Shown: positions 807 to 11,017 of the stretch, one piece after another
Layout: the number at the start of each line of letters is the position of its first letter
How positions within the stretch are numbered: the first letter of the stretch is position 1
Assembly (NCBI GenBank): GCA_020891255.1
Contig: BQFW01000010.1
Location: forward strand, 1,426,001-1,490,000
From: Entomortierella parvispora E1425
Lineage: Eukaryota; Fungi; Mortierellomycota
Length of the DNA stretch: 64,000 nucleotides
Reading direction: 5' to 3'
Position numbers and translations under genes: made by a program
Notes under the pieces: generated by a model
Databases searched by the model: none
The model's input: the letters and a program-made list of their open reading frames with translations, nothing else
Told to the model about the DNA's origin: nothing

Positions 807-1230
807 ATTTTGTGCCACTCCAACCCAGTCAAATAAAATTTACCCACCATGGAACCTGAAAACAGCTAGGCCAATCTTGAGAATAAACCCCCAATTGATT
901 GCTACTTACATCCTTCATCAGTTTTGAGCATTATGTTCTTGCCGACCGAGATACACTAGAATACCGTTGCTAAAGGTCGCAATGACCACCATAATATTCT
1001 TTTCCAGATCCAAAGTCATGTCAGTTGTCTCTTTAGTTTCCGCTTCGGTCAGCGTGTTTGCTTTGCAATTTGAACTATTGCTTATGTTGTGAATTGATTC
1101 GGTGTTGGAGCTCCTTGGTTTAGCAACAGGATAGGCAGTATCCAGACTGACATTAGCCATACAGAAAGGCTGATTGATGTTCAAAAGAGAAAGAGGGTAA
1201 TATTGAGTAAAGAATGAAAGCGAGGTGGAT

Positions 1231-1488
1231 TTATTTGTTCTTGGTCTGACGGTACGAGAAGCGTTTCCTGGTAGGGGCGAATTCTCCGAGCTTGTGTCCG
1301 ACCATCTCGTCAGTGACGGTCAGTGGGGTGTAGTCCTTGCCGTTGTGGATTTGGAACTTGAGGCCGACAAAGGAAGGGATGATGGTGCAGGCGCGAGCGT
1401 TTGTCCGAACAGGGATGTTCTGGGTCAGAGCTTGCCTAAGACCGGGCAGGGCCACGAAAAAGGGGCCTTTCCATGCAGAGCGAGGCAT
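1231..1488 (-). CDS. RSM19: Mitochondrial ribosomal protein uS19m (85 aa, intronless)
   Basis: [10 protein letters not shown]...[26 protein letters not shown]...[18 protein letters not shown] carries the uS19 signature HNGK...[10 protein letters not shown] at 1488-1486. Confidence 0.95.
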
Positions 1489-1945
1489 TATGAGTTTATG
1501 ATTTGAAATGAGAAGAGGATGGTGTGATAGAGAAGCGATCTGCAAGCCGAGGTGAGTGAGCAAAGTGGCCGAGATGTAGCGAGAAGGACGACAGAGAGTG
1601 TGTTGATCGGATGGATGAGAGCAAAGCTGATAAATGGAAAGGGGATGAAATGAAATGAAATGAATGCAGTGGATTCGTTGATCTGGCCCCGATGGTGGCG
1701 TATGGCTCCTGTGGCACAGGGGCGGGCAGAGTGAGTGTGTTTACAAATTCCTGGAGCCATTCAAATAGACGTCACAAAATTAGCTCGGCTGGATCCTCCT
1801 GTCCAGGAGCAGGGTGCTGTGCCCTGTCCATTCGTCTCGTCCAGCTGAGCTTGCTGCTTGCGCTCAACATACATATTCTATTTTGGACGTTCATCATCAT
1901 CATCATCTCTCTCTTTCTCCCTCATCTCTATTTCTCTACATCATC
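1489..1945. promoter_or_regulatory. Putative bidirectional promoter, RSM19 / GDP-fucose synthase
   Basis: 457 bp between two head-to-head ATGs, with pyrimidine-rich tracts upstream of each start on its own sense strand. Confidence 0.55.
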
Positions 1946-3379
<1,434 letters not shown>

Positions 3380-3502
3380 AAATAACATTTACAAGTTTGT
3401 CTTGCTACACTTACATTTTTTGTGTTCTCCCATCCTCATTTCCCACTCCCTAAAAAAATCACCAGTATATTTTTTGCTGGAGGACATTTTTAAAAAAACA
3501 AT

Positions 3503-3513
3503 AAACAATCATG
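3503..3513 (+). repeat. Left copy of putative 8-bp target-site duplication, with a 3-nt insertion
   Basis: AAACAATCATG directly before the TIR. The right flank 8890-8897 is AAACAATG, identical once CAT is removed. Confidence 0.6.
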
Positions 3514-4195
3514 CAGCCTCGACAACTGGGCCACTTTTTCGAAAAAAGTGACCATCCTTCGTTGCACAGAAACGGTGGCTTCACTCAATTTTTTGGTGGC
3601 CACCACTTGGTCGCCACTCAAAATAAAGGAGTGGTGCAAAGGTGTCAACAAACCTGCAGCTCCACTCTTTTTCACTCTTTTTCACTCTTTTTCACTCTTT
3701 TTCACTCTTTTTGAGTGATTCCTGCAGGAAAATGGTGATTTGTCCCAAAAAGGATCGCATCCACCAAAAAAAAAAGTGGTCGCCAGTAGTCCCACCAAAA
3801 AAAAGTGGACCTCACTTGGGAAAGGAGTGGTCGGAACATTTTGTGCGACCCAAAAGCAGAGACAAAAAGCGCGTGTGCGGTGCGGTCCAGCGTCTCTCCT
3901 CTCGAGCAGCATGCGCATGCCCATACCATGGGCCACACTAGCTTCAAGCGTGCCGTGGTCTATCTGTTCACGCCTGTTTGTCCACGGATGTTTAATTGCT
4001 TGTCTGCCCTTTTTTTTTTTTTTTGTTTCCCGTCTTTTTCCAATCCTGGCCCAAGTCGACATTCTCTCCCAGTGAAATCGTATCATGGACGCGCAAGAGC
4101 AAGCCCTCCCTCCTCAACAACCCGAGGCTGATCCTGAACTCGTTCCCCAACCTCCACAAAACTTATGGCACCCACTGGTAGCGGGACTTGAAGAC
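3514..4195 (+). repeat. Left terminal inverted repeat (682 bp)
   Basis: Reverse complement of 8210-8889. By eye the only difference is a poly-T of 15 vs 13 nt (4010-4024 vs 8381-8393). The mirrored ORFs in the track translate identically. Confidence 0.95.
3663..3712 (+). repeat. Subterminal tandem repeat (CACTCTTTTT)x5
   Basis: Five perfect 10-bp units inside the left TIR. Confidence 0.97.
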
Positions 4196-4234
4196 TATTT
4201 TTTATGCATCGCTGTGCAGTACATATTCAACTAA
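4085..4234 (+). pseudogene. Truncated TIR-borne copy of the accessory ORF start (37 shared codons + 12 unrelated)
   Basis: MDAQEQALPPQQPEADPELVPQPPQNLWHPLVAGLED is identical to the start of ORF 7871-8320, then YFLCIAVQYIFN-stop once the TIR ends. Confidence 0.7.
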
Positions 4235-4304
4235 TGTTAAGGAAGGACTTCTCGTCATTTTTCTCCTAATGTTTACTCAGCTAAGTCTTATATCTTGAGA
4301 GCTC

Positions 4305-7300
4305 TCACCCAATGTTGCTATCCAAATTTTGGAATATGTCGATATCGTCATCGCCATCATTATAGTAATCGTCCAGTTTTATCTTGTAGCCGGTGTCCCA
4401 GGTAGCCAGCAAAACCAATGCCTTAAGCTTGAGGATACCAAGACGCGTTCTTTTTGCTGTAAGAACGCATCCAGAGACGCTAAAGAGCCTTTCACTTGCC
4501 GCTGAGGAGGCTTGTATACTAAAGAAGATGACAACAAACTGGGACAGGTACTTGAACATGCCTCCATGCACTGCCCACCACTCATGAGGTTTGTTGTAAT
4601 CTTTCAACGGTTCCGATTGGGCAAGTTCGATATAACTCTGCAGCTCCATCGACAGGAGCGTGGTGAGATCCTCAGTAGACTTATCCCCAAAGTCGATTCC
4701 TGTGCGCAGTGGACTTTCAGGATCAGCCGTTGCAAGAATAAGGTCCTCTGCAAGCTGTTTCAGTCTTTCTCCTTCCAATCCAGTGAAAAATCCATCATTC
4801 TTAATATTGGTAGGGTGGAGGTATGTGGCAATGAGGACTTCATCGGCCATATCAGCTGTGGAGAAGAGGCCTGCGAGCTGCCTTACAAACTTTTTCTTGG
4901 AACCGCTCCACAATAGGAATCGTCAACAGAGGGTCGGAACTCAGGACCTTGCGGATCTTGGGGTATAAGCCTGTGATGACAGGGTCGTTGGAGGACATTG
5001 CTACTGTCAATTCTGCGGTGGGTCGCAGGACAGTAAGAAGCTCCTTGAGAACATCGAACTCTTCGTTACTCAGAAGCTGACTACCATATTCTCGCCAAAA
5101 TGTCTTCTCCATTTGCGTGGCAGTAGGCATCTGCGCTCGCGCCTTGACCAGGTCTGTTGCTTCACGTAGCTCCAGAAGGCGCTCTATCATCATGAATCTG
5201 CTGTTCCATCGCGTAACAGTGAATGTGAGAGCCTTTAGTTCCTTTTGTTTTAAGTCGGATCGCGCTTTGCATAGGAGAGTTGATCCTCCGCTTGATAGGA
5301 ACGCCTTGTTGTGTTCTTCAGCCTTGCGGACAATAGTCTTTATATCACCCGTTGCTTCGATGATGTTGCGGATAAACAGTTGAAGTTTATGACAGGCACA
5401 GGGAAACCACGGACCAAAAGTTTCGTCATCGTTGATTAAAAAGTCGAGTTGTTGCTTTCATGACATTGGCGGAGTCGGTAGTACTGCAAAAGGCCTTGCC
5501 TTTTAGCCCCCAAAAATAAAAGGGTTCGCTCTAGAAGTTGTGATTTGTATTAGATCAAGCTGCAGCCAGGGCCAAAGACGACGGCAAGCAGAGCTACCAT
5601 CCACACTTACCTACTATATCCTGGATGTCAACAGCCGTCCCAGAACCAAAGTATTCCTCAAAACCAATCGCCAGAGATTTGGGTTTGTAGGTCTTTTTCT
5701 CGATGTAATGGAACGTGATCCCGATGAATTTCCGGCCAAATCTCTTCCAACCGTCGTAGGTAAAGCAGCCTCGAACGACTCCTGCAGCAAATATTTTGTC
5801 CAGTCGTGCGCGAGCATTTCCGTAAAGCTTGAATACACACTTTCCGACGGTTTGAGGAGAAGGCGACGGGTATGAAAATCCGAGAATTCTAGCGACGCCC
5901 GAGGCATACGGGCCAGTAACCACTGAGAACGGGAGTCTCTGTTGAATCGCGCTGTGAGTAGTGAATAGCTGTATAGCTTCTTGAGTACTCGGCAATATCT
6001 TGGTCAGCTGCGAGGACTTTGGCATTGTCTGGTCATAGAATACTGAATACCCTTCCGCGTTTCCTGCTTCCACATCTACATGAATTGACGTTTGATAGGT
6101 TAAAAATGTGATAGTGTACACCTATGAGTAATTCATTGAGATAGATTACCTTCGAATCCTTGATTTTTTCGGAATGTTGTCAATGCTGAGAGTATTTCTG
6201 GATGGTTCCTTGTAACATGTGCCGTACGCATGCCTGTACCTTGAGATCCTGGCTTATGGTAGTGACATCTGCGGTTCTGACTAGTCTTGACTCGGCAAAA
6301 GAACCATGCCTTTGGAATGTCAGAGACATAAGGAAACTTTTTCCCTGTGTATGGATCAACGGTTGGGGCGTTGATGGTGGGCTGGAGATCAACCTGGTTG
6401 ATTGTGGCAGGATTTGTTGTTGACACCTTCTCAAAGAAATGACGGTGCCATGCCCCTGGAATCGTAAGATCGATCTGCCTTATGGGTATATGTGCGAGCA
6501 TAGACTTGGCCTCCTTGCACACACTATATGGTGGGAGCTGGCCCACTTTCAGTGTTTTCTCGTAGTCTGCTATAGTCATGGATATACCTCCGCCATTTGG
6601 TGGAGGTTCGGAAAGGGCTGGGGTTGACCGAAGGAGTACAGGTGACGATGTACTATCGCCCGTTTGTTCCTGAGTGTACATTTCCACTTCGGACATCATT
6701 GATGGCTCTCGTGAAATGGACGCCACCGATGAAGTTCTACTCAGATTCCTTTGTCGAGCATTCCAAAGTTCCATTGGAGTTGTCTCAACTTCAGCCTCTC
6801 GGGCAGTTGGTGATACGGCTCGGGACGAAGCCCCAAGGTGTATATCTGCAATTGCCCTCGGTGCACCTGGAGTTGGACCACGGATTTGATCCGCAGGACG
6901 TTTCTTTGGAATAGTTGGAGGTACTCTGTAGTGCTCATAGGGCATTCCGGGAGGAGGGCGATACTGTGGATGAATGGGAAGAGTAGAATACTGCATAGTA
7001 TGGTGTGATTCGGTGTGATGCATCCCTGGGTAAGGACTGTATGGTACATCTGAATATGGATGGAAGTGGCCTGGTGGGTGGTAGACAGGTTGATTTGGGT
7101 CTTGAGAGTGATATTGAGGAAATTGATACTGTCCAGGGATATGGTATGCATGGTGAAGCTCATGAGGTTGGGAGTATGGGTACTGAGGACCTCGAGGTTG
7201 GGATGGAACTAGTGGGTTATATTGATGGTGGGAAGGTAGATAGGGATGAGGACGAGTCTGTGGTGCTTGAACAGCCTCATTATCGGTGTGGGAAGGAGGA

Positions 7301-7611
7301 CGAGGATGAGGATGAGGATGAAGGCGAGGAGGAGGATGAGTCCGGGGTGCTTGGATGGTCTCATTATCGATGTTGGAAGGAGGATGAGGACGAGGACGAG
7401 GACCAGTCTGTGGCTCTTGGACATCTTCAGTATCGATGCTGGAAGGAGGATAAGGACGGAGACGTGGACCAGTCTGTGGCTCTTGGGTAGCCTCAGTTTC
7501 GATGTTGGAAGGAGGGTGAGGAGGAGGATGAGGAGGAGGAGGATCGGTCTGTACTGTCTGGACAGCATCATCATCATCGTTGAAATGATGACTATATGGG
7601 TCGTAGTCCAT
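4305..7611 (-). pseudogene. hAT transposase, ~1050 aa, 3 exons, with 2-3 single-base frameshifts (possibly assembly errors)
   Basis: ATG 7611 (MDYDPYSHH). Pro/His-rich N-terminus, then a BED-like finger CRVKTSQNRRC...HVTRNH. Intron 6149-6076; exon with CFTYDGW (D1); intron ~5610-5531; then WGL...TTDSANVM (D2), PWFPCACHKLQL, VTRWNSRFMMIERLL, YLHP, and EWW...IQASSAASERLFSVSG (E, C-terminal dimerisation domain). TGA at 4305-4307. Confidence 0.88.
7224..7512 (-). repeat. Degenerate ~66-bp coding tandem repeat (4-5 units) in the transposase N-terminus
   Basis: Core CGATG(T/C)TGGAAGG-like words at 7500, 7434, 7368, 7284 and 7224 (spacing 66/66/84/60), encoding PPS(N/S/H)xDxExxQxPxTxPRP(H/Y)P units. 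Confidence 0.85.
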
Positions 7612-7870
7612 CGTGAGAGAAATGGTAGTACTATAGATGTTATAGAGAAAAGAAAAGGTAGAAAATAAGGAGGAAAAAAAGGAAAGAGGAAGAGGAAAGG
7701 AAAATTCAAGACAAGAGCATTGGAAGAAGTCAAGAGTTCCCACAGCATGGAGGAAACGGGAAGGTTCACAGTGCTTGCGATAAGCTTGGGCGATTTTCTT
7801 GGTCTGGGGCATGCATGCACACCATGGCCACAAAAACATCGAGGAAAAAATGTGAAGGGCTTCACATGGT

Positions 7871-8320
7871 TTATTGATCAGGTAAGAGATGTGTTTGATC
7901 CAAAGCTGGGTCACCTTGAGCGATTCGGAAGGCAACAACTGCATCGATCAAATCTCTGTGGGTGTTCCTGATGTGACGCAGTCGAATGTTCAAGCCAAAA
8001 TCAGAGCGAATTCTGTAAGGACAGTTCTGAACTTGACATTTAGAGAAGCGAGGACCAGTGTCTCCAGTGGCCCTGTCCTCCAATGCAAAAAAATTATTGT
8101 CAATCGATTGATTCCTAGCAACTCTGATAGGAACTGCGGCGAGGGCAAGCCTGTTTGCAGCGATGCATGCTTGAACTGGAGGGAGCTCACCAATTGGCAA
8201 TTGAAAGTGGTCTTCAAGTCCCGCTACCAGTGGGTGCCATAAGTTTTGTGGAGGTTGGGGAACGAGTTCAGGATCAGCCTCGGGTTGTTGAGGAGGGAGG
8301 GCTTGCTCTTGCGCGTCCAT
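7871..8320 (-). CDS. Transposon accessory protein (149 aa): stand-alone BED-like zinc-finger module paralogous to the transposase N-terminal domain
   Basis: Uninterrupted ORF with C-x4-C...H-x4-H (KCQVQNCPY...RHIRNTH). LPIGELPP..AC..A...LAAVPIR and FRIAQG align to transposase LKVGQLPP..VC..A...LAHIPIR and FRKNQG. Confidence 0.8.
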   Translation of the reverse strand: MDAQEQALPPQQPEADPELVPQPPQNLWHPLVAGLEDHFQLPIGELPPVQACIAANRLALAAVPIRVARNQSIDNNFFALEDRATGDTGPRFSKCQVQNCPYRIRSDFGLNIRLRHIRNTHRDLIDAVVAFRIAQGDPALDQTHLLPDQ

Positions 8321-8889
8321 GATACGATTTCACTGGGAGAGAATGTCGACTTGGGCCAGGATTGGAAAAAGACGGGAAACAAAAAAAAAAAAAGGGCAGA
8401 CAAGCAATTAAACATCCGTGGACAAACAGGCGTGAACAGATAGACCACGGCACGCTTGAAGCTAGTGTGGCCCATGGTATGGGCATGCGCATGCTGCTCG
8501 AGAGGAGAGACGCTGGACCGCACCGCACACGCGCTTTTTGTCTCTGCTTTTGGGTCGCACAAAATGTTCCGACCACTCCTTTCCCAAGTGAGGTCCACTT
8601 TTTTTTGGTGGGACTACTGGCGACCACTTTTTTTTTTGGTGGATGCGATCCTTTTTGGGACAAATCACCATTTTCCTGCAGGAATCACTCAAAAAGAGTG
8701 AAAAAGAGTGAAAAAGAGTGAAAAAGAGTGAAAAAGAGTGGAGCTGCAGGTTTGTTGACACCTTTGCACCACTCCTTTATTTTGAGTGGCGACCAAGTGG
8801 TGGCCACCAAAAAATTGAGTGAAGCCACCGTTTCTGTGCAACGAAGGATGGTCACTTTTTTCGAAAAAGTGGCCCAGTTGTCGAGGCTG
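8210..8889 (-). repeat. Right terminal inverted repeat (680 bp)
   Basis: Mirror of 3514-4195. Coordinate sums are constant (12403 outside and 12405 inside the poly-T difference). Confidence 0.95.
8691..8740 (-). repeat. Subterminal tandem repeat (AAAAAGAGTG)x5, mirror copy
   Basis: Five perfect 10-bp units inside the right TIR. Confidence 0.97.
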
Positions 8890-9082
8890 AAACAATGCCT
8901 CCCTCCCTCAATGATTGCTCAACCCATGATGTCGTCGCCACGCGGCCCCTGCAGAATCTTTTGAGAATTATTTATTAGATCGAAAGCAGTTTATTCCTTC
9001 TGAGTTGTTCAATTCTGTAAAGTTTGTTCTTTATGGGTGTTGTCCCCTTTGTATTCAAGTTGGCCTGTAAAAGTTGTCTCGT

Positions 9083-11017
9083 CTAGGCGGCCATCTCCTG
9101 CTGCTCCTCGGCCTGAGTCTGTCGCTGCTTCAGGACAAGCTCGTTGCCAGTCACACGCTTATAAAGGTCCTTGACATCGTCGCAAACAGTCTCAAAGTGA
9201 GAAGTGGCATCGTACGATCTGGAGACAAAGACGTTGTCCTGGCGACCATCATGGATGGGCTCGCAAATGTCGGCAATTTGAACGAACCTAATGATATAAT
9301 AGAAAGACGCATATAAAAGTCAGCAAACTGTATCAGAAGACAGGTCATCTGTGCCTGAATAGAATTGAATTGAGGCGTACTTCTCAACAATGGGTCCAAG
9401 GAGGTTGAGACCGGGCTGGATCTCCTCTTGTGGGTTGTCAGTTTCGATGATGGTCGAAACAATGGCGAGGTAGTGGTTCTTCTCGCAGACGTTGTGCGAG
9501 GCAGAGACTCCGGCAATGTAGATATCGTTCTGGCGCTTAACCTGGTTCTGGGGGATGATCAGCTGGAACGAGTCCACGCTATCGGTGTTGGGGATGGGCC
9601 CATTGAGCATGCAGATGGCACGAATGACACGGTTAACCTTGTGGACCTTCTCGGGAGCATAGGAGGGGTCGCAGATGACCTGGTTGCACTTGGCAACTTC
9701 ATCGCCGCAGCGAACACCAACAACCTTTCCGTCCTCGTAGATAATCTCATCCACCTTCTTGTCCAACATGTAGGTACCTCCATAGATGGCACTCAAACTG
9801 CAAGCATTTTGCGCATATGGAAATGAAAAACAGCGTTAGGAACAGCCAAGAAACGAAAACTGGCATCTAGTGACAAAGGTATACACATACCGAGCGAAAC
9901 CCTGAGGAAGCTCGCCAAGACCGTAAAGAGGGTACAAGTAAGGCGACTTGCCCCAACGAGCCATTGAAGACATGTACAAGGTGATGCGGTCAAAAGTCTC
10001 CAAGGCAGGGCGGTTAATGTAGCTGTATTAGGATGACAGAGAAAAGGATGTCAATAAATGACTAGATCAATCATATCCCTTCCCCTCGACTCCGTATTCT
10101 GCGCGTAAACTTTACCTGTCATCCAAGTGGAGGGCAAGGGCGTGTCCAATAAAGTCAATGGTGCCAGCCTCGAGTCCAAAGTATTTGTAAACGGCCTCCA
10201 TGGGGGTAATGTTGATATCCATGCCCTGGTGGGTCGAGGGGTCGTCCTTTCTGTAGTTCTGGACAAACTCAAAGAACTTCTTGGCTCTGCGCTTCTCGAA
10301 AAGACCCATCAAGGGGGAGCGAACAGCCTCCATCTCGGTGGCAGGGACCTTAGCGATCCTGCCGTCACGGTAAACATAAGAGCCAGCAATTTGCTTGAAC
10401 TCCAAGTAACGGGTGACATCGGTGTGAGTCAAGATTTTGACCAATTCTCCGTTGGCCATCATGAACTTGGGAATCAAGTCAATGTTGTAGTCGCGGTCGC
10501 GTCCAAGCTTCTGGTCAGGGGTCTCGCCTTCACGGAACTTTCTGTAAATCTAATACCAATAAAAGAATATAATGTCAACAGGTCAGCTGTGCGGCTCATT
10601 TACTGTGGTTTCTTTATCGTGTATCTCCAGAAAACAGGTTGCTGTGCAACATCCCATGGTCACTTGTGCTGCCTTGGTTTTTTCACGCATTCATACCTGA
10701 GTCAACGTCAAACTGGCACTCTCGCCTCCATAGTAGTCATTGCGATCCATGTGAAGGACCTTCTTGCCCTCAATGGACAAGAGACCGGAAAGAATGCACT
10801 CGGTCAAACCGGTGCCCAAAACAACGACATCGTATTGCTCATCCTAGCCAAGGATGAAGAATGAAAGAGATTGTTTAGCACCTTGCACAAAAAAGAAGCA
10901 GGTTCGAACGCCTTCGACGTGATTCCTTCAGTTTATCCTCGACTGGCAAGTTATCCTTGCGCAGGTGGACCAGGAGGGGTATCTGTCCAATTGTCTCTTT
11001 CGCGATGCACTCACCAT
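9083..11017 (-). CDS. GDI1: Rab GDP-dissociation inhibitor, multi-exon, ATG-only first coding exon
   Basis: ATG|GTGAGT at 11017-11015, acceptor at 10844, then [45 protein letters not shown]; [36 protein letters not shown]; [10 protein letters not shown]; [17 protein letters not shown] at 9083-9085. Confidence 0.96.

What the first reader, a model, noticed from the sequence alone, without database searches (positions are those of the whole stretch)
3514..8889. hAT transposon with ~680-bp near-perfect terminal inverted repeats
Sequence: CAG-ended TIRs of 682/680 bp that differ only in one poly-T length surround a transposase with the full hAT motif set (DGW, TTD, CxxH, RW, WW, SERLFS) and an 8-bp TSD-like flank. 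Established: hAT TIRs are normally short (a few tens of bp at most) with asymmetric subterminal regions, and long TIRs are typical of MULE/Foldback/Galileo-type elements. Inference: either a distinct long-TIR hAT lineage, or one end was rebuilt as an inverted copy of the other, since the repeat boundary falls inside a coding sequence at codon 37. TIR identity implies recent activity or ongoing conversion.
Basis: partly seen in the sequence, partly recalled or inferred. Interest (0 to 1): 0.8.

Follow-up and report, generated by a model that had tools for sequence, protein, structure and literature searches.

The report
Active hAT transposon with 680-bp ends
A young, expressed jumping gene of the hAT type in the soil fungus Entomortierella parvispora has 680-bp mirror-image ends, about 25 times the usual hAT length. 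The ends carry the start of a second gene and stay identical to each other, and a distant relative shows a similar layout.

Summary
Window 3514-8889 is a 5376-bp element with arms 3514-4195 and 8210-8889. The arms are identical except for one poly-T length.

- **Not an artefact or a one-off.** The genome (GCA_020891255.1) holds six full-length copies, 99.1-99.9% alike. All have the same arms, at different sites. Three have perfect 8-bp target duplications.
- **Independent support.** Short-read contigs reproduce the junctions and give a depth of about 6 copies and 12 arms, so there are no MITEs.
- **Superfamily.** The transposase is hAT: Pfam PF05699, and a family profile matches Hermes at E about 1e-70.
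- **Intact and expressed.** Three frameshifts in this copy are homopolymer assembly errors. DNA and spliced RNA contigs restore one 1049-codon ORF.
- **Second gene.** ORF A (149 aa) resembles the transposase's DNA-binding region. It starts inside the arm, and its RNA depth is about 80-100 times that of the transposase.
- **Concerted evolution.** Copy-specific changes appear in both arms of the same copy.
- **Relatives.** A transposase from the same clade (about 33% identical) also sits between long inverted repeats. Two relatives carry ORF A where this element keeps only its first 37-40 codons.

First-reader notes of this scan flagged other copies elsewhere in this genome.

Verdict: a new long-TIR, two-gene variant of hAT.

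The parts
3514..8889 (-). Whole element, 5376 bp, genes on the minus strand. It is one of six full-length copies in the genome.
   Evidence: BLASTN of the element against six fetched loci gives full-length matches at 99.1-100%. Short-read contig depth is 460 inside against 78 in the flanks, about 5.9 copies.
8210..8889 (-). 5'-side arm (right TIR), 680 bp. It ends in CAG and holds the upstream region, start codon (8320) and first 37 codons of ORF A.
3514..4195 (+). 3'-side arm (left TIR), 682 bp, identical to the right arm except for poly-T length. It holds a mirrored ORF A start (ATG 4085) that runs into a stop after 49 codons (4085-4234).
   Evidence: The bases just past the boundary still read D-Y-F, as in the ORF A orthologue P0161.
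8890..8897 (+). Target-site duplication, right copy, AAACAATG.
3503..3513 (+). Target-site duplication, left copy, AAACAAT-CAT-G. Three extra bases lie between TSD bases 7 and 8. They equal the palindromic bases expected from an opened flank hairpin.
   Evidence: The junction is confirmed by short-read contig X1 record 1 (3300-3543, 0 differences). The hairpin reading is inference.
7871..8320 (-). ORF A, 149 aa, unspliced, with a C-x4-C-x15-H-x4-H finger. It is a paralogue of the transposase N-terminal DNA-binding region and is the accessory gene.
   Evidence: BLASTP to P0004 residues 354-485 gives E=0.001. An ORF A profile hits the transposase N-termini of relatives at E 1e-7 to 4e-15. Orthologues: P0161 at 51% identity and the L013 gene at 40%, E=8e-23. 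RNA contig depth is 3374-4355.
4219..7669 (-). Transposase mRNA. The CDS runs 7611..4305 (stop 4307-4305) and encodes 1049 aa once three assembly errors are removed.
   Evidence: Spliced RNA contig X2 record 11, depth 42. The reading frame was checked. Annotated products of other copies are P0001-P0006.
6076..6149 (-). Intron 1, 74 nt, GT..AG.
   Evidence: Joint 6075/6150 in the X2 contig; sequence.
5531..5610 (-). Intron 2, 80 nt, GTAAGT..AG.
   Evidence: Joint 5530/5611 in the X2 contig; sequence.
5512..5516 (-). Homopolymer run that is one base too long in the assembly, giving a false frameshift.
   Evidence: One base is left out in both the X1 (DNA, depth 460) and X2 (RNA) contigs. Copies L001-L004 have the shorter run.
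5438..5442 (-). Homopolymer run that is one base too long in the assembly, giving a false frameshift between the TTD and CxxH motifs.
   Evidence: Copy L001 has the shorter run, and its product P0004 reads through.
4891..4895 (-). Homopolymer run that is one base too long in the assembly, giving a false frameshift before the dimerisation domain.
   Evidence: Copies L002-L004 and L006 have the shorter run. Relative P0010 reads through the equivalent place.
3663..3712 (+). (CACTCTTTTT)x5 microsatellite in the left arm, mirrored at 8691-8740. Copy L001 has 7 units in both arms.
3529..3985 (.). Nine GTGG[ACT]C motifs scattered over the outer 470 bp of the arm and mirrored in the other arm. They are candidate subterminal binding sites.
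   Evidence: 9 observed against about 1 expected; 0 of 2000 shuffles reach 9. The motif was chosen after looking at the sequence.
7230..7534 (-). Four 66-84-bp tandem units that encode the proline-rich repeats of the transposase N-terminus.

Best explanation
This is one copy of a very young, autonomous, two-gene hAT-superfamily DNA transposon of Entomortierella parvispora.

**Movement.** It moves by cut-and-paste and makes 8-bp target duplications.

**Ends.** Its ends are about 680-bp inverted repeats, not the few tens of bp usual for hAT. Each arm has the CAG terminus, scattered short subterminal motifs, a 10-bp microsatellite, and the upstream region, start codon and first 37-40 codons of the accessory gene ORF A.
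- At the 5' side this leads into the complete ORF A. ORF A is a small zinc-finger protein related to the transposase's own DNA-binding region, and its RNA is far more abundant than that of the transposase.
- At the 3' side only the start is left, pointing inward. It sits where relatives carry a whole ORF A.

**Why the arms are this long.** The inner edge of the repeat is most likely the breakpoint of a deletion in a once longer, gene-carrying arm.

**Why the arms stay identical.** They are homogenised by conversion between the two arms of one element. A change in one arm therefore ends up in both.

**Shown:** the architecture, copy number, hAT identity, intact spliced mRNA, expression of both genes, mirrored variants, and relatives with long repeats or a 3'-side ORF A.

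**Inferred:** that the promoter lies in the arm, that conversion is the mechanism, the deletion history, the role of ORF A as a DNA-binding helper or repressor, and which part of the arm the transposase needs.
For: **Architecture and copies.** The arms are 682/680 bp and identical bar the poly-T run. Six full-length copies at different loci all have the arms. The TSDs GAATAAGA, GATTGGAG and GAAAAAAA are perfect.

**Independent short-read contigs.**
- The interior contig 4166-8239 ends in the inner 30 nt of an arm at both sides.
- Junction contigs cross both element ends.
- Depth is 964 (arms), 460 (interior) and 78 (flanks).
- A different sample with the same species label (X3) has a contig that joins the two flanks without the element.

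**hAT identity.** PF05699 matches at E about 4e-13. There are 1647 HMMER relatives. A profile of 29 relatives hits Hermes 4d1q/2bw3 at E about 1e-70, and 24 of the 29 carry PF05699.

**Intact gene.** All three frameshifts are absent from the DNA and RNA contigs. The RNA contig is spliced at two GT-AG introns. The result is one 1049-codon ORF.

**Concerted arms.** Three changes are each present in both arms of the copies that carry them:
- an SNP (window 8297/4108) in L002 and L003;
- a 1-bp A-run change (window 8637/3775) in L002 and L003;
- a +20-bp microsatellite expansion in L001.
No one-armed change exists apart from poly-T length.

**Lineage.** The window, L011's transposase and a Mortierella sp. 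GBA30 fragment fall in one clade with 100/99 support. L011 has collinear inverted repeats 166-~620 / ~4454-5007 around its transposase. Its outer 40 bp are 98% alike and it has a probable degenerate 8-bp TSD. L013 has a 190-aa ORF A orthologue lying convergent to, and downstream of, the transposase. L011 has a degenerate piece of ORF A in the same place.

**Chemistry.** The 3 extra bases at the left flank are exactly those expected from a flank hairpin nicked 1 nt outside the element. Kat1, a fungal hAT-derived enzyme, forms its hairpin 1 nt from the TIR (PMC4763223).
Against: - No transposition event was observed directly.
- The relatives come from short metagenome or Logan contigs. Only L011 shows both ends. 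Its arms are degenerate (72-98% by segment), its TSD is imperfect (chance about 1%), and its termini do not resemble this element's.
- P0012/L009, another member of the same clade in this genome, has no long inverted repeat.
- Concerted evolution rests on three mirrored changes in two sub-lineages of an assembly known to contain homopolymer errors. One of the three is an A-run length.
- Run X2 is labelled 'DNA?'. I read it as RNA because of its spliced contig and very uneven depth.
- No listed RNA contig bridges 4196-4218, so inward transcription from the left arm is not shown.
- Pfam zf-BED does not score on this protein.
- The literature search covered open-access text only. Long-TIR hAT entries may exist in Repbase or Dfam, which I could not search.
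Confidence: 0.8

Rival explanations
1. The long arms arose once, recently, in the master copy of this E. parvispora family. One end together with the ORF A start was copied in inverted orientation onto the other end, for example by hAT hairpin chemistry or repair. They are not an inherited trait of a lineage, and L011's repeats are an independent case.
For: All six copies are under 1% diverged and could descend from one rearranged master. A hairpin-based model by which a hAT element gains a new inverted repeat is published for Ds (PMC1978519). The ends of the closest relatives (L007, L014/L015, L013) were not recovered. L009 in the same clade lacks long repeats.
Against: L011, in the same well-supported clade, has long arms. 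L013 and L011 have ORF A sequence at the 3' side reading inward, which matches the truncated start in this element's 3' arm. Unverified first-reader notes report a second two-gene hAT family with about 400-bp TIRs in this genome.
Confidence: 0.2
2. The arms are identical only because the family is young. Nothing homogenises them.
For: The copies differ at only about 11 substitution sites in 5.4 kb, so few arm changes are expected in any case.
Against: All three arm changes that distinguish copies are present in both arms of the same copy, including an exact +2-unit microsatellite expansion. Independent double hits are very unlikely.
Confidence: 0.1
3. Assembly artefact: one arm is a misassembled copy of the other.
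For: The assembly has homopolymer errors in this very element.
Against: Six loci with different flanks and TSDs share the structure. A separately assembled short-read graph has both arm-interior junctions and both arm-flank junctions, with a 12:6:1 depth ratio.
Confidence: 0.02
4. The element is not hAT but a MULE, Foldback or Galileo-type element, which normally have long TIRs.
For: Long TIRs with an internal promoter and a second gene recall MuDR. ORF A gives a non-significant match to DBD_Tnp_Mut (E=0.095).
Against: The hAT dimerisation domain, the Hermes profile match, the hAT motif set and the 8-bp TSDs all point to hAT. No MULE or THAP domain was found.
Confidence: 0.01

Closest known systems
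Classical hAT elements (Ac, hobo, Hermes, Restless)
   Same: DDE transposase with a C-terminal hAT dimerisation domain, the D/D/CxxH/RW/E blocks, an N-terminal Cys2His2 finger, CAG termini, 8-bp target duplication and short subterminal motifs. A flank footprint fits hairpin excision.
   Different: TIRs are about 680 bp instead of 5-27 bp. A second gene starts inside the TIR. The transposase has 1049 aa, with a 350-aa proline-rich N-terminus. The protein is so diverged that Pfam finds only the dimerisation domain. It sits in a separate clade with other Mortierellaceae and soil-metagenome sequences.
MuDR / long-TIR MULEs
   Same: Long TIRs that hold promoters and binding sites (PMC3310237). Two genes. 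In relatives L013 and L011 the two genes are convergent, as mudrA and mudrB are in MuDR (the MuDR layout is from my own knowledge).
   Different: A different transposase superfamily, and an 8-bp rather than 9-11-bp duplication. In this copy the two genes are in tandem, and one arm carries only a truncated gene start.
AcademH elements of the same genome
   Same: Same host. About 1-kb identical TIRs that carry a start codon and the first coding sequence. A young multi-copy family.
   Different: An unrelated superfamily. There, both arms feed functional genes that share an N-terminus. Here only one arm leads into a complete gene. I did not re-test those findings.
Foldback and Galileo (P superfamily) elements
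   Same: Very long TIRs with internal repeats and multiple binding sites (PMC3688188).
   Different: They have a THAP transposase. Their arms are built largely of tandem repeats and carry no coding start.
Herves (hAT, Anopheles)
   Same: A hAT element with unusually long non-coding ends (left end 1478 bp, PMC3143072).
   Different: The Herves ends are asymmetric and its TIRs are only 11 bp. They are not inverted copies of each other.

Membership tests
hAT superfamily | C-terminal hAT dimerisation domain (Pfam PF05699) | tested here: met
   E=3.6e-13 on window 4308-4913(-) and 4.6e-13 on the L003 copy.
hAT superfamily | Transposase core homologous to a solved hAT transposase | tested here: met
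   A profile of this protein plus 28 HMMER relatives hits Hermes 4d1q, 2bw3, 8edg and 6dww at E about 1e-70. The single sequence alone finds nothing in the PDB.
hAT superfamily | Conserved catalytic and signature blocks (D, D, CxxH, RW, E in the C-terminal block) | tested here: met
   After subtracting one from the positions printed (the script's ORF began one codon before the ATG): DGW at 595, TTD at 659, CACH at 686, RWNS at 749, WW at 959, SERLFS at 987. In alignment A1 the D, W, H, R and W columns are at least 90% conserved.
hAT superfamily | 8-bp target-site duplication | tested here: met
   Three of six copies are perfect. The window copy and L004 have an 8-bp TSD with 3 or 2 extra bases next to one end. 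L006 is ambiguous because it lies in a T-rich repeat.
hAT superfamily | Short TIRs (5-27 bp). This is typical of the superfamily, not strictly defining. | tested here: not met
   Arms are 680-704 bp in all six copies. The published range is in PMC10741241 and PMC3942097.
hAT superfamily | N-terminal BED-type zinc finger | tested here: inconclusive
   The pattern C-x9-C-x15-H-x4-H is present, but Pfam zf-BED does not score. Eighteen of 29 relatives carry zf-BED.
hAT superfamily | Excision through a hairpin on the flanking DNA | tested here: inconclusive
   The CAT inserted between TSD bases 7 and 8 equals the predicted palindromic bases. In L004 only the first of the two inserted bases fits. 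This is a sequence reading, not an assay.
hAT subgroups Ac / Buster / Tip | Placement in a named subgroup, and that subgroup's target-site consensus | not tested
   No named reference sequences were available. The six TSDs show no clear nTnnnnAn or nnnTAnnn pattern.
MULE (Mutator-like) | MURA-type transposase and a 9-11-bp duplication | tested here: not met
   No MULE domain was found; ORF A gives DBD_Tnp_Mut at E=0.095, which is not significant. TSDs are 8 bp.
Autonomous, recently active element | Intact transposase gene, transcription, several near-identical copies with intact ends and TSDs, and insertion polymorphism | tested here: met
   One 1049-codon ORF and a spliced mRNA contig. Six copies are at least 99.1% alike. 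An empty site exists in a different sample of the same species label, X3. The element is absent from seven other runs with the same species label, with word share 0.00-0.03. Mobility itself was not assayed.

The most novel reading that the evidence does not exclude
A hAT lineage specific to Mortierellaceae has ends that are long, gene-bearing inverted repeats. Ancestrally each arm carried a promoter and a copy of a DNA-binding accessory gene derived from the transposase's own N-terminus. This gave a MuDR-like layout with genes driven from the TIRs. The arms are kept identical by conversion. The abundant accessory protein binds the repeated arm motifs and governs transposition. The same solution evolved independently in the Academ elements of the same fungus, which points to a host-specific pressure that favours long coding TIRs.
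Probability: 0.3. Interest if true: 0.75.

Novelty: new variant of a known kind. Interest (0 to 1): 0.6.

Why it matters
Short TIRs are part of the textbook description of hAT, the superfamily of Ac, hobo, Hermes and Tol2. Automated TE classifiers use TIR length as a criterion. A currently active hAT family with 680-bp arms shows that this trait is not fixed.

The family offers a small natural system of six copies, with both genes expressed, for three questions:
- what long TIRs do in a hairpin-forming cut-and-paste transposon;
- how the two arms of an element are kept identical;
- what a stand-alone copy of a transposase DNA-binding domain, whose RNA is about 80-100 times as abundant as the transposase mRNA, does to transposition.

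Together with the coding TIRs reported for Academ elements in the same genome, it suggests that something in this fungus favours such architectures.

There is also a practical point. The public annotation splits this transposase into fragments (EMPS_07656 and its paralogues) because of homopolymer errors.

Tried and rejected
- **RNA runs.** The search listed none. The RNA evidence came instead from run X2, which is labelled 'DNA?' but holds a spliced contig.
- **Pfam.** The N-terminal 867 aa (P0004) and the individual ORF pieces gave nothing except PF05699.
- **PDB with the single sequence.** No hit. A family profile was needed.
- **Word-based protein search.** It found only the genome's own paralogues and one 27% relative.
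- **Metagenome scan for relatives.** The second found one 1-kb contig, so the ends of most relatives stayed out of reach.
- **L009.** This same-clade hAT-like gene in the same genome has no inverted repeat of 14 nt or more that brackets it, apart from poly-T/A runs. It is probably immobile or domesticated and says little about the ancestral state.
- **Introns instead of frameshifts.** I considered short introns at 5430-5457 and 4855-4922. The candidate GT..AG intervals are 13-37 nt, the frames do not fit, and the reads show one-base errors.
- **MITE derivatives.** Arm depth is 12.3 times the flank depth and interior depth is 5.9 times, which leaves no room for extra arm-only copies in this strain.
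- **Target-site consensus.** Six sites show no clear pattern.
- **Literature.** Searches for long-TIR hAT elements found long TIRs only in MULE, P/Galileo, Tc1-like and piggyBac elements. Repbase and Dfam could not be searched.
- **Inward transcription from the left arm.** Not resolvable. The arms are identical, so contigs map to both, and no listed RNA contig crosses 4196-4218.

Full report
**1.
A repeat search finds arms 3514-4022/8381-8889 (100%) and 4012-4201/8204-8393 (99%). A global alignment shows 3514-4195 and 8210-8889 identical except for two extra T in one run, followed by scattered mismatches. Both arms start with CAGCCTCG, and the 21-nt terminus occurs only at these two places in the window, against 0 expected. 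On the minus strand, ORF 8320..7871 starts inside the right arm, and the repeat ends in its codon 37. The same ATG lies at 4085 in the left arm and reads inward into a stop after 49 codons.

**2. It is neither an artefact nor a peculiarity of this copy.**
The window's ORF led to annotated proteins of Entomortierella parvispora, assembly GCA_020891255.1. Fetching their loci gave six places, and L005 is the window itself. BLASTN shows six full-length elements of 5373-5417 bp, 99.1-100% identical to the window copy, each with both arms. Within every copy the arms (682-704 bp) differ only in poly-T length and at the boundary base.

Three copies have perfect 8-bp target duplications: GAATAAGA, GATTGGAG and GAAAAAAA. 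L006 lies in an ATTTTT repeat and is ambiguous.

Logan contigs of run X1, from the same sample, were assembled independently of the reference and give the same graph:
- a contig 4166-8239 whose two ends are the inner 30 nt of an arm;
- contigs crossing both arm-flank junctions without any difference;
- depths of 964 (arm), 460 (interior) and 78 (flank), that is 12 arms and 6 interiors.

The 12:6 ratio also rules out arm-only derivatives such as MITEs in this strain.

Seven runs of other samples with the same species label hold almost none of the element (word share 0.00-0.03). A contig of one of them, X3, joins the two flanks (3380 to 8960) without the element. The element is therefore an insertion that is polymorphic within the species label.

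**3. It is hAT.**
- The C-terminal piece matches Pfam Dimer_Tnp_hAT.
- An exhaustive HMMER search with residues 440-867 of the longest annotated copy finds 1647 relatives at E<=0.001.
- An alignment of 29 of them has the classical hAT consensus (TTDxWTS, DNAxN, CxAHxLxL, TRWNS, LDPRFK, PLxWW, SERxFS), and the query's D, W, H and RW columns are nearly invariant.
- Its profile hits the four Hermes transposase structures at E about 1e-70.
- Of the 29 members, 24 carry PF05699, 18 carry zf-BED and 14 carry DUF659.
- The protein is very diverged. No Pfam model scores on the first 867 residues, and the single sequence finds nothing in the PDB.

**4. The gene is intact; the frameshifts are assembly errors.**
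In the window the reading frame breaks three times, each time at a 5-base homopolymer. Among the six assembled copies these run lengths vary in a mosaic way, which explains the annotated products of 213-867 aa. The collapsed short-read contig (depth 460, all copies together) and the RNA contig both lack one base at 4891, 5438 and 5512. With those three bases removed, the mRNA carries a single 1049-codon ORF from ATG 7611 to the stop at 4305-4307. Relative P0010 reads through the last of these sites with a similar sequence.

**5. Both genes are transcribed.**
Run X2 is labelled 'DNA?'. I read it as RNA for two reasons. It holds a 3297-nt contig covering 4219-7669 that skips exactly 6076-6149 and 5531-5610 (GT..AG on the minus strand), and its depth is very uneven.
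- The transposase mRNA therefore starts at or before 7669 and is separate from ORF A.
- Contigs over the ORF A body (7857-8065 and 8097-8254) have depth 3374-4355, against 42 for the transposase mRNA.
- No joint was reported in ORF A.
- The ORF A start codon lies 569 bp inside the arm, and the six copies have unrelated flanks, so I infer that its promoter lies in the arm. The start site itself was not mapped.

**6. ORF A is a conserved accessory gene derived from the transposase's DNA-binding region.**
- It aligns with transposase residues 354-485, including the Cys2His2 pattern.
- A small ORF A profile hits the transposase N-termini of relatives L012, L011, L007 and L013 at E 4e-15 to 1e-7.
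- True orthologues exist. P0161 is 51% identical over 96% of ORF A. In contig L014 it is followed by a reading frame ending in MDYD, the first residues of this element's transposase, so the two genes lie in tandem as they do here.
- A 190-aa gene in L013 is 40% identical (E=8e-23), but it lies downstream of the transposase and convergent to it.
- L011 has a degenerate ORF A-like piece in the same 3' convergent position (E=4e-4).
- The left arm of the window element therefore keeps the start of ORF A at the place, and in the orientation, where relatives have the gene. Just past the identity boundary the left arm still reads D-Y-F, as P0161 does, before homology stops.

My reading is that the inner edge of the TIR is a deletion breakpoint in a formerly longer, gene-carrying arm. 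This is inference.

**7. The arms evolve together.**
Aligning the six copies gives about 11 substitution sites and some indels. Three changes fall in the arms, apart from the unstable poly-T run, and each is present in both arms of the copies that carry it:
- an SNP in L002 and L003 (window 8297 and its mirror 4108);
- a 1-bp A-run change in the same two copies (8637 / 3775);
- two extra CACTCTTTTT units in L001.

L002 and L003 are separate insertions with different TSDs. A change that arises in one arm must therefore be copied to the other. Conversion between the arms is the simplest mechanism, but I did not test it. The sample is small, and one of the three changes is a homopolymer length.

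**8. The odd flank fits hAT chemistry.**
The right flank is AAACAATG. The left flank is AAACAAT-CAT-G.
- hAT transposases make a hairpin on the flanking DNA (PMC5499845). For Kat1, the hairpin forms mostly 1 nt from the TIR (PMC4763223). The 1-nt offset for Hermes is from my memory of Zhou et al. 2004.
- If the top strand is nicked one base outside the element, the flank hairpin reads ...AAACAAT-C-ATTGTTT....
- Opening it three bases past the tip adds CAT. Rejoining it to the element end, which kept the G, gives exactly the observed sequence.
- L004 has AGTAAAA-CG-G against AGTAAAAG. The insertion is at the same position but at the other end of the element, and only the first inserted base is as predicted.
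- Both junctions are confirmed by independent contigs.

I read these as one-ended cleavage followed by rejoining, and so as a trace of transposase activity. It rests on two sites and is inference.

**9. Is it a lineage trait?**
A tree of the block around the first catalytic D puts eight sequences in one clade with 100/99 support, on a long branch away from 24 other hAT proteins. The eight are the window element, P0008, P0011, P0014, P0024, P0075 (L011), P0027 (Mortierella sp. GBA30) and P0012 (L009, same genome).

L011 is the only relative with enough DNA to show both ends.
- Its transposase (1173-3705) lies between collinear inverted repeats 166-~620 and ~4454-5007. The outer 40 bp are 98% alike and the next 270 bp are 84-89% alike. 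Further in come indels and a low-complexity stretch.
- ACTCGAAC and ACTC-AAC lie 2 nt outside the repeats. A match of this kind has a chance of about 1%.

L009 has no such repeats. Unverified first-reader notes report a second two-gene hAT family with about 400-bp TIRs in this genome. So a long-TIR lineage is likely but not proven. The ends of the closest relatives could not be fetched.

**10. Comparison and novelty.**
Published descriptions give hAT TIRs of 5-27 bp or 10-25 bp, with 8-bp TSDs (PMC10741241, PMC3942097). My full-text searches found long TIRs discussed only for MULE, Galileo/Foldback, Tc1-like and piggyBac elements. Herves has long but asymmetric ends (PMC3143072).

The nearest functional analogue is MuDR, whose long TIRs hold promoters (PMC3310237). 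A hairpin model for hAT-made new inverted repeats exists for Ds (PMC1978519).

I file this as a new variant of hAT. It meets every sequence-based hAT criterion tested except TIR length and a Pfam-level BED match, and it adds a TIR-initiated accessory gene and concerted arms. Repbase and Dfam were not searchable, so prior curated examples cannot be excluded.

Nine GTGG[ACT]C motifs in the arm, against about 1 expected, are candidate binding sites, but I picked the motif after looking at the sequence.

Other copies of this family were already flagged by first readers elsewhere in this genome.

Noticed in passing
window 4891-4895, 5438-5442, 5512-5516; also L001-L006: The reference assembly has one-base homopolymer errors inside this repeat family. 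As a result the public annotation splits one 1049-aa transposase into fragments (EMPS_07656, 10542, 04847, 10668, 10418, 06414, and separate C-terminal 264-268-aa genes). Other multi-copy genes of this assembly may suffer the same problem.
   Followed up: yes
L004:11581-14185 (BQFW01000014.1, next to another copy of the element): A gene for a product of 1283 aa or more carries a weak Pfam hit to Cas12f1-like_TNB (PF07282). It may be a eukaryotic TnpB/Fanzor-type gene.
   Followed up: no
L009:8001-11121 (BQFW01000014.1): A 956-aa hAT-like gene (P0012) belongs to the same clade as this element but has no inverted repeats around it. It may be immobile or domesticated. A first-reader note (s1-193978), matched here only by its length of 3121 letters, calls such a gene in this genome domesticated.
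   Followed up: partly
window 7230-7534: Four tandem units of 66-84 bp encode proline-rich repeats of roughly 22-28 aa in the 350-aa N-terminal extension of the transposase (71 of its 350 residues are proline). This is unusual for hAT, and its function is unknown.
   Followed up: no
window 3300-3513 and 8890-9100: The element sits between two strongly expressed genes (RNA contig depth 941 and 408). These are an epimerase-family gene on the plus strand and a GDI gene on the minus strand, apparently between their convergent 3' ends. RNA contigs of other copies run from flank into the arm (loose ends at 3513 and 8891 in X2), which suggests read-through transcription into the element.
   Followed up: partly
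same genome, other pieces (earlier notes s1-185161, s1-185328, s1-176290): First-reader notes report a second two-gene hAT family with about 400-bp TIRs. A follow-up reports Academ elements with 1-kb coding TIRs in the same fungus. Long, gene-bearing TIRs may be a recurring theme in this genome.
   Followed up: no
window 4010-4024 / 8381-8393: The poly-T run in the arms is the only place where the two arms of a copy differ (13-15 T among arms). The short-read contig gives yet another length, so the true lengths are uncertain.
   Followed up: partly
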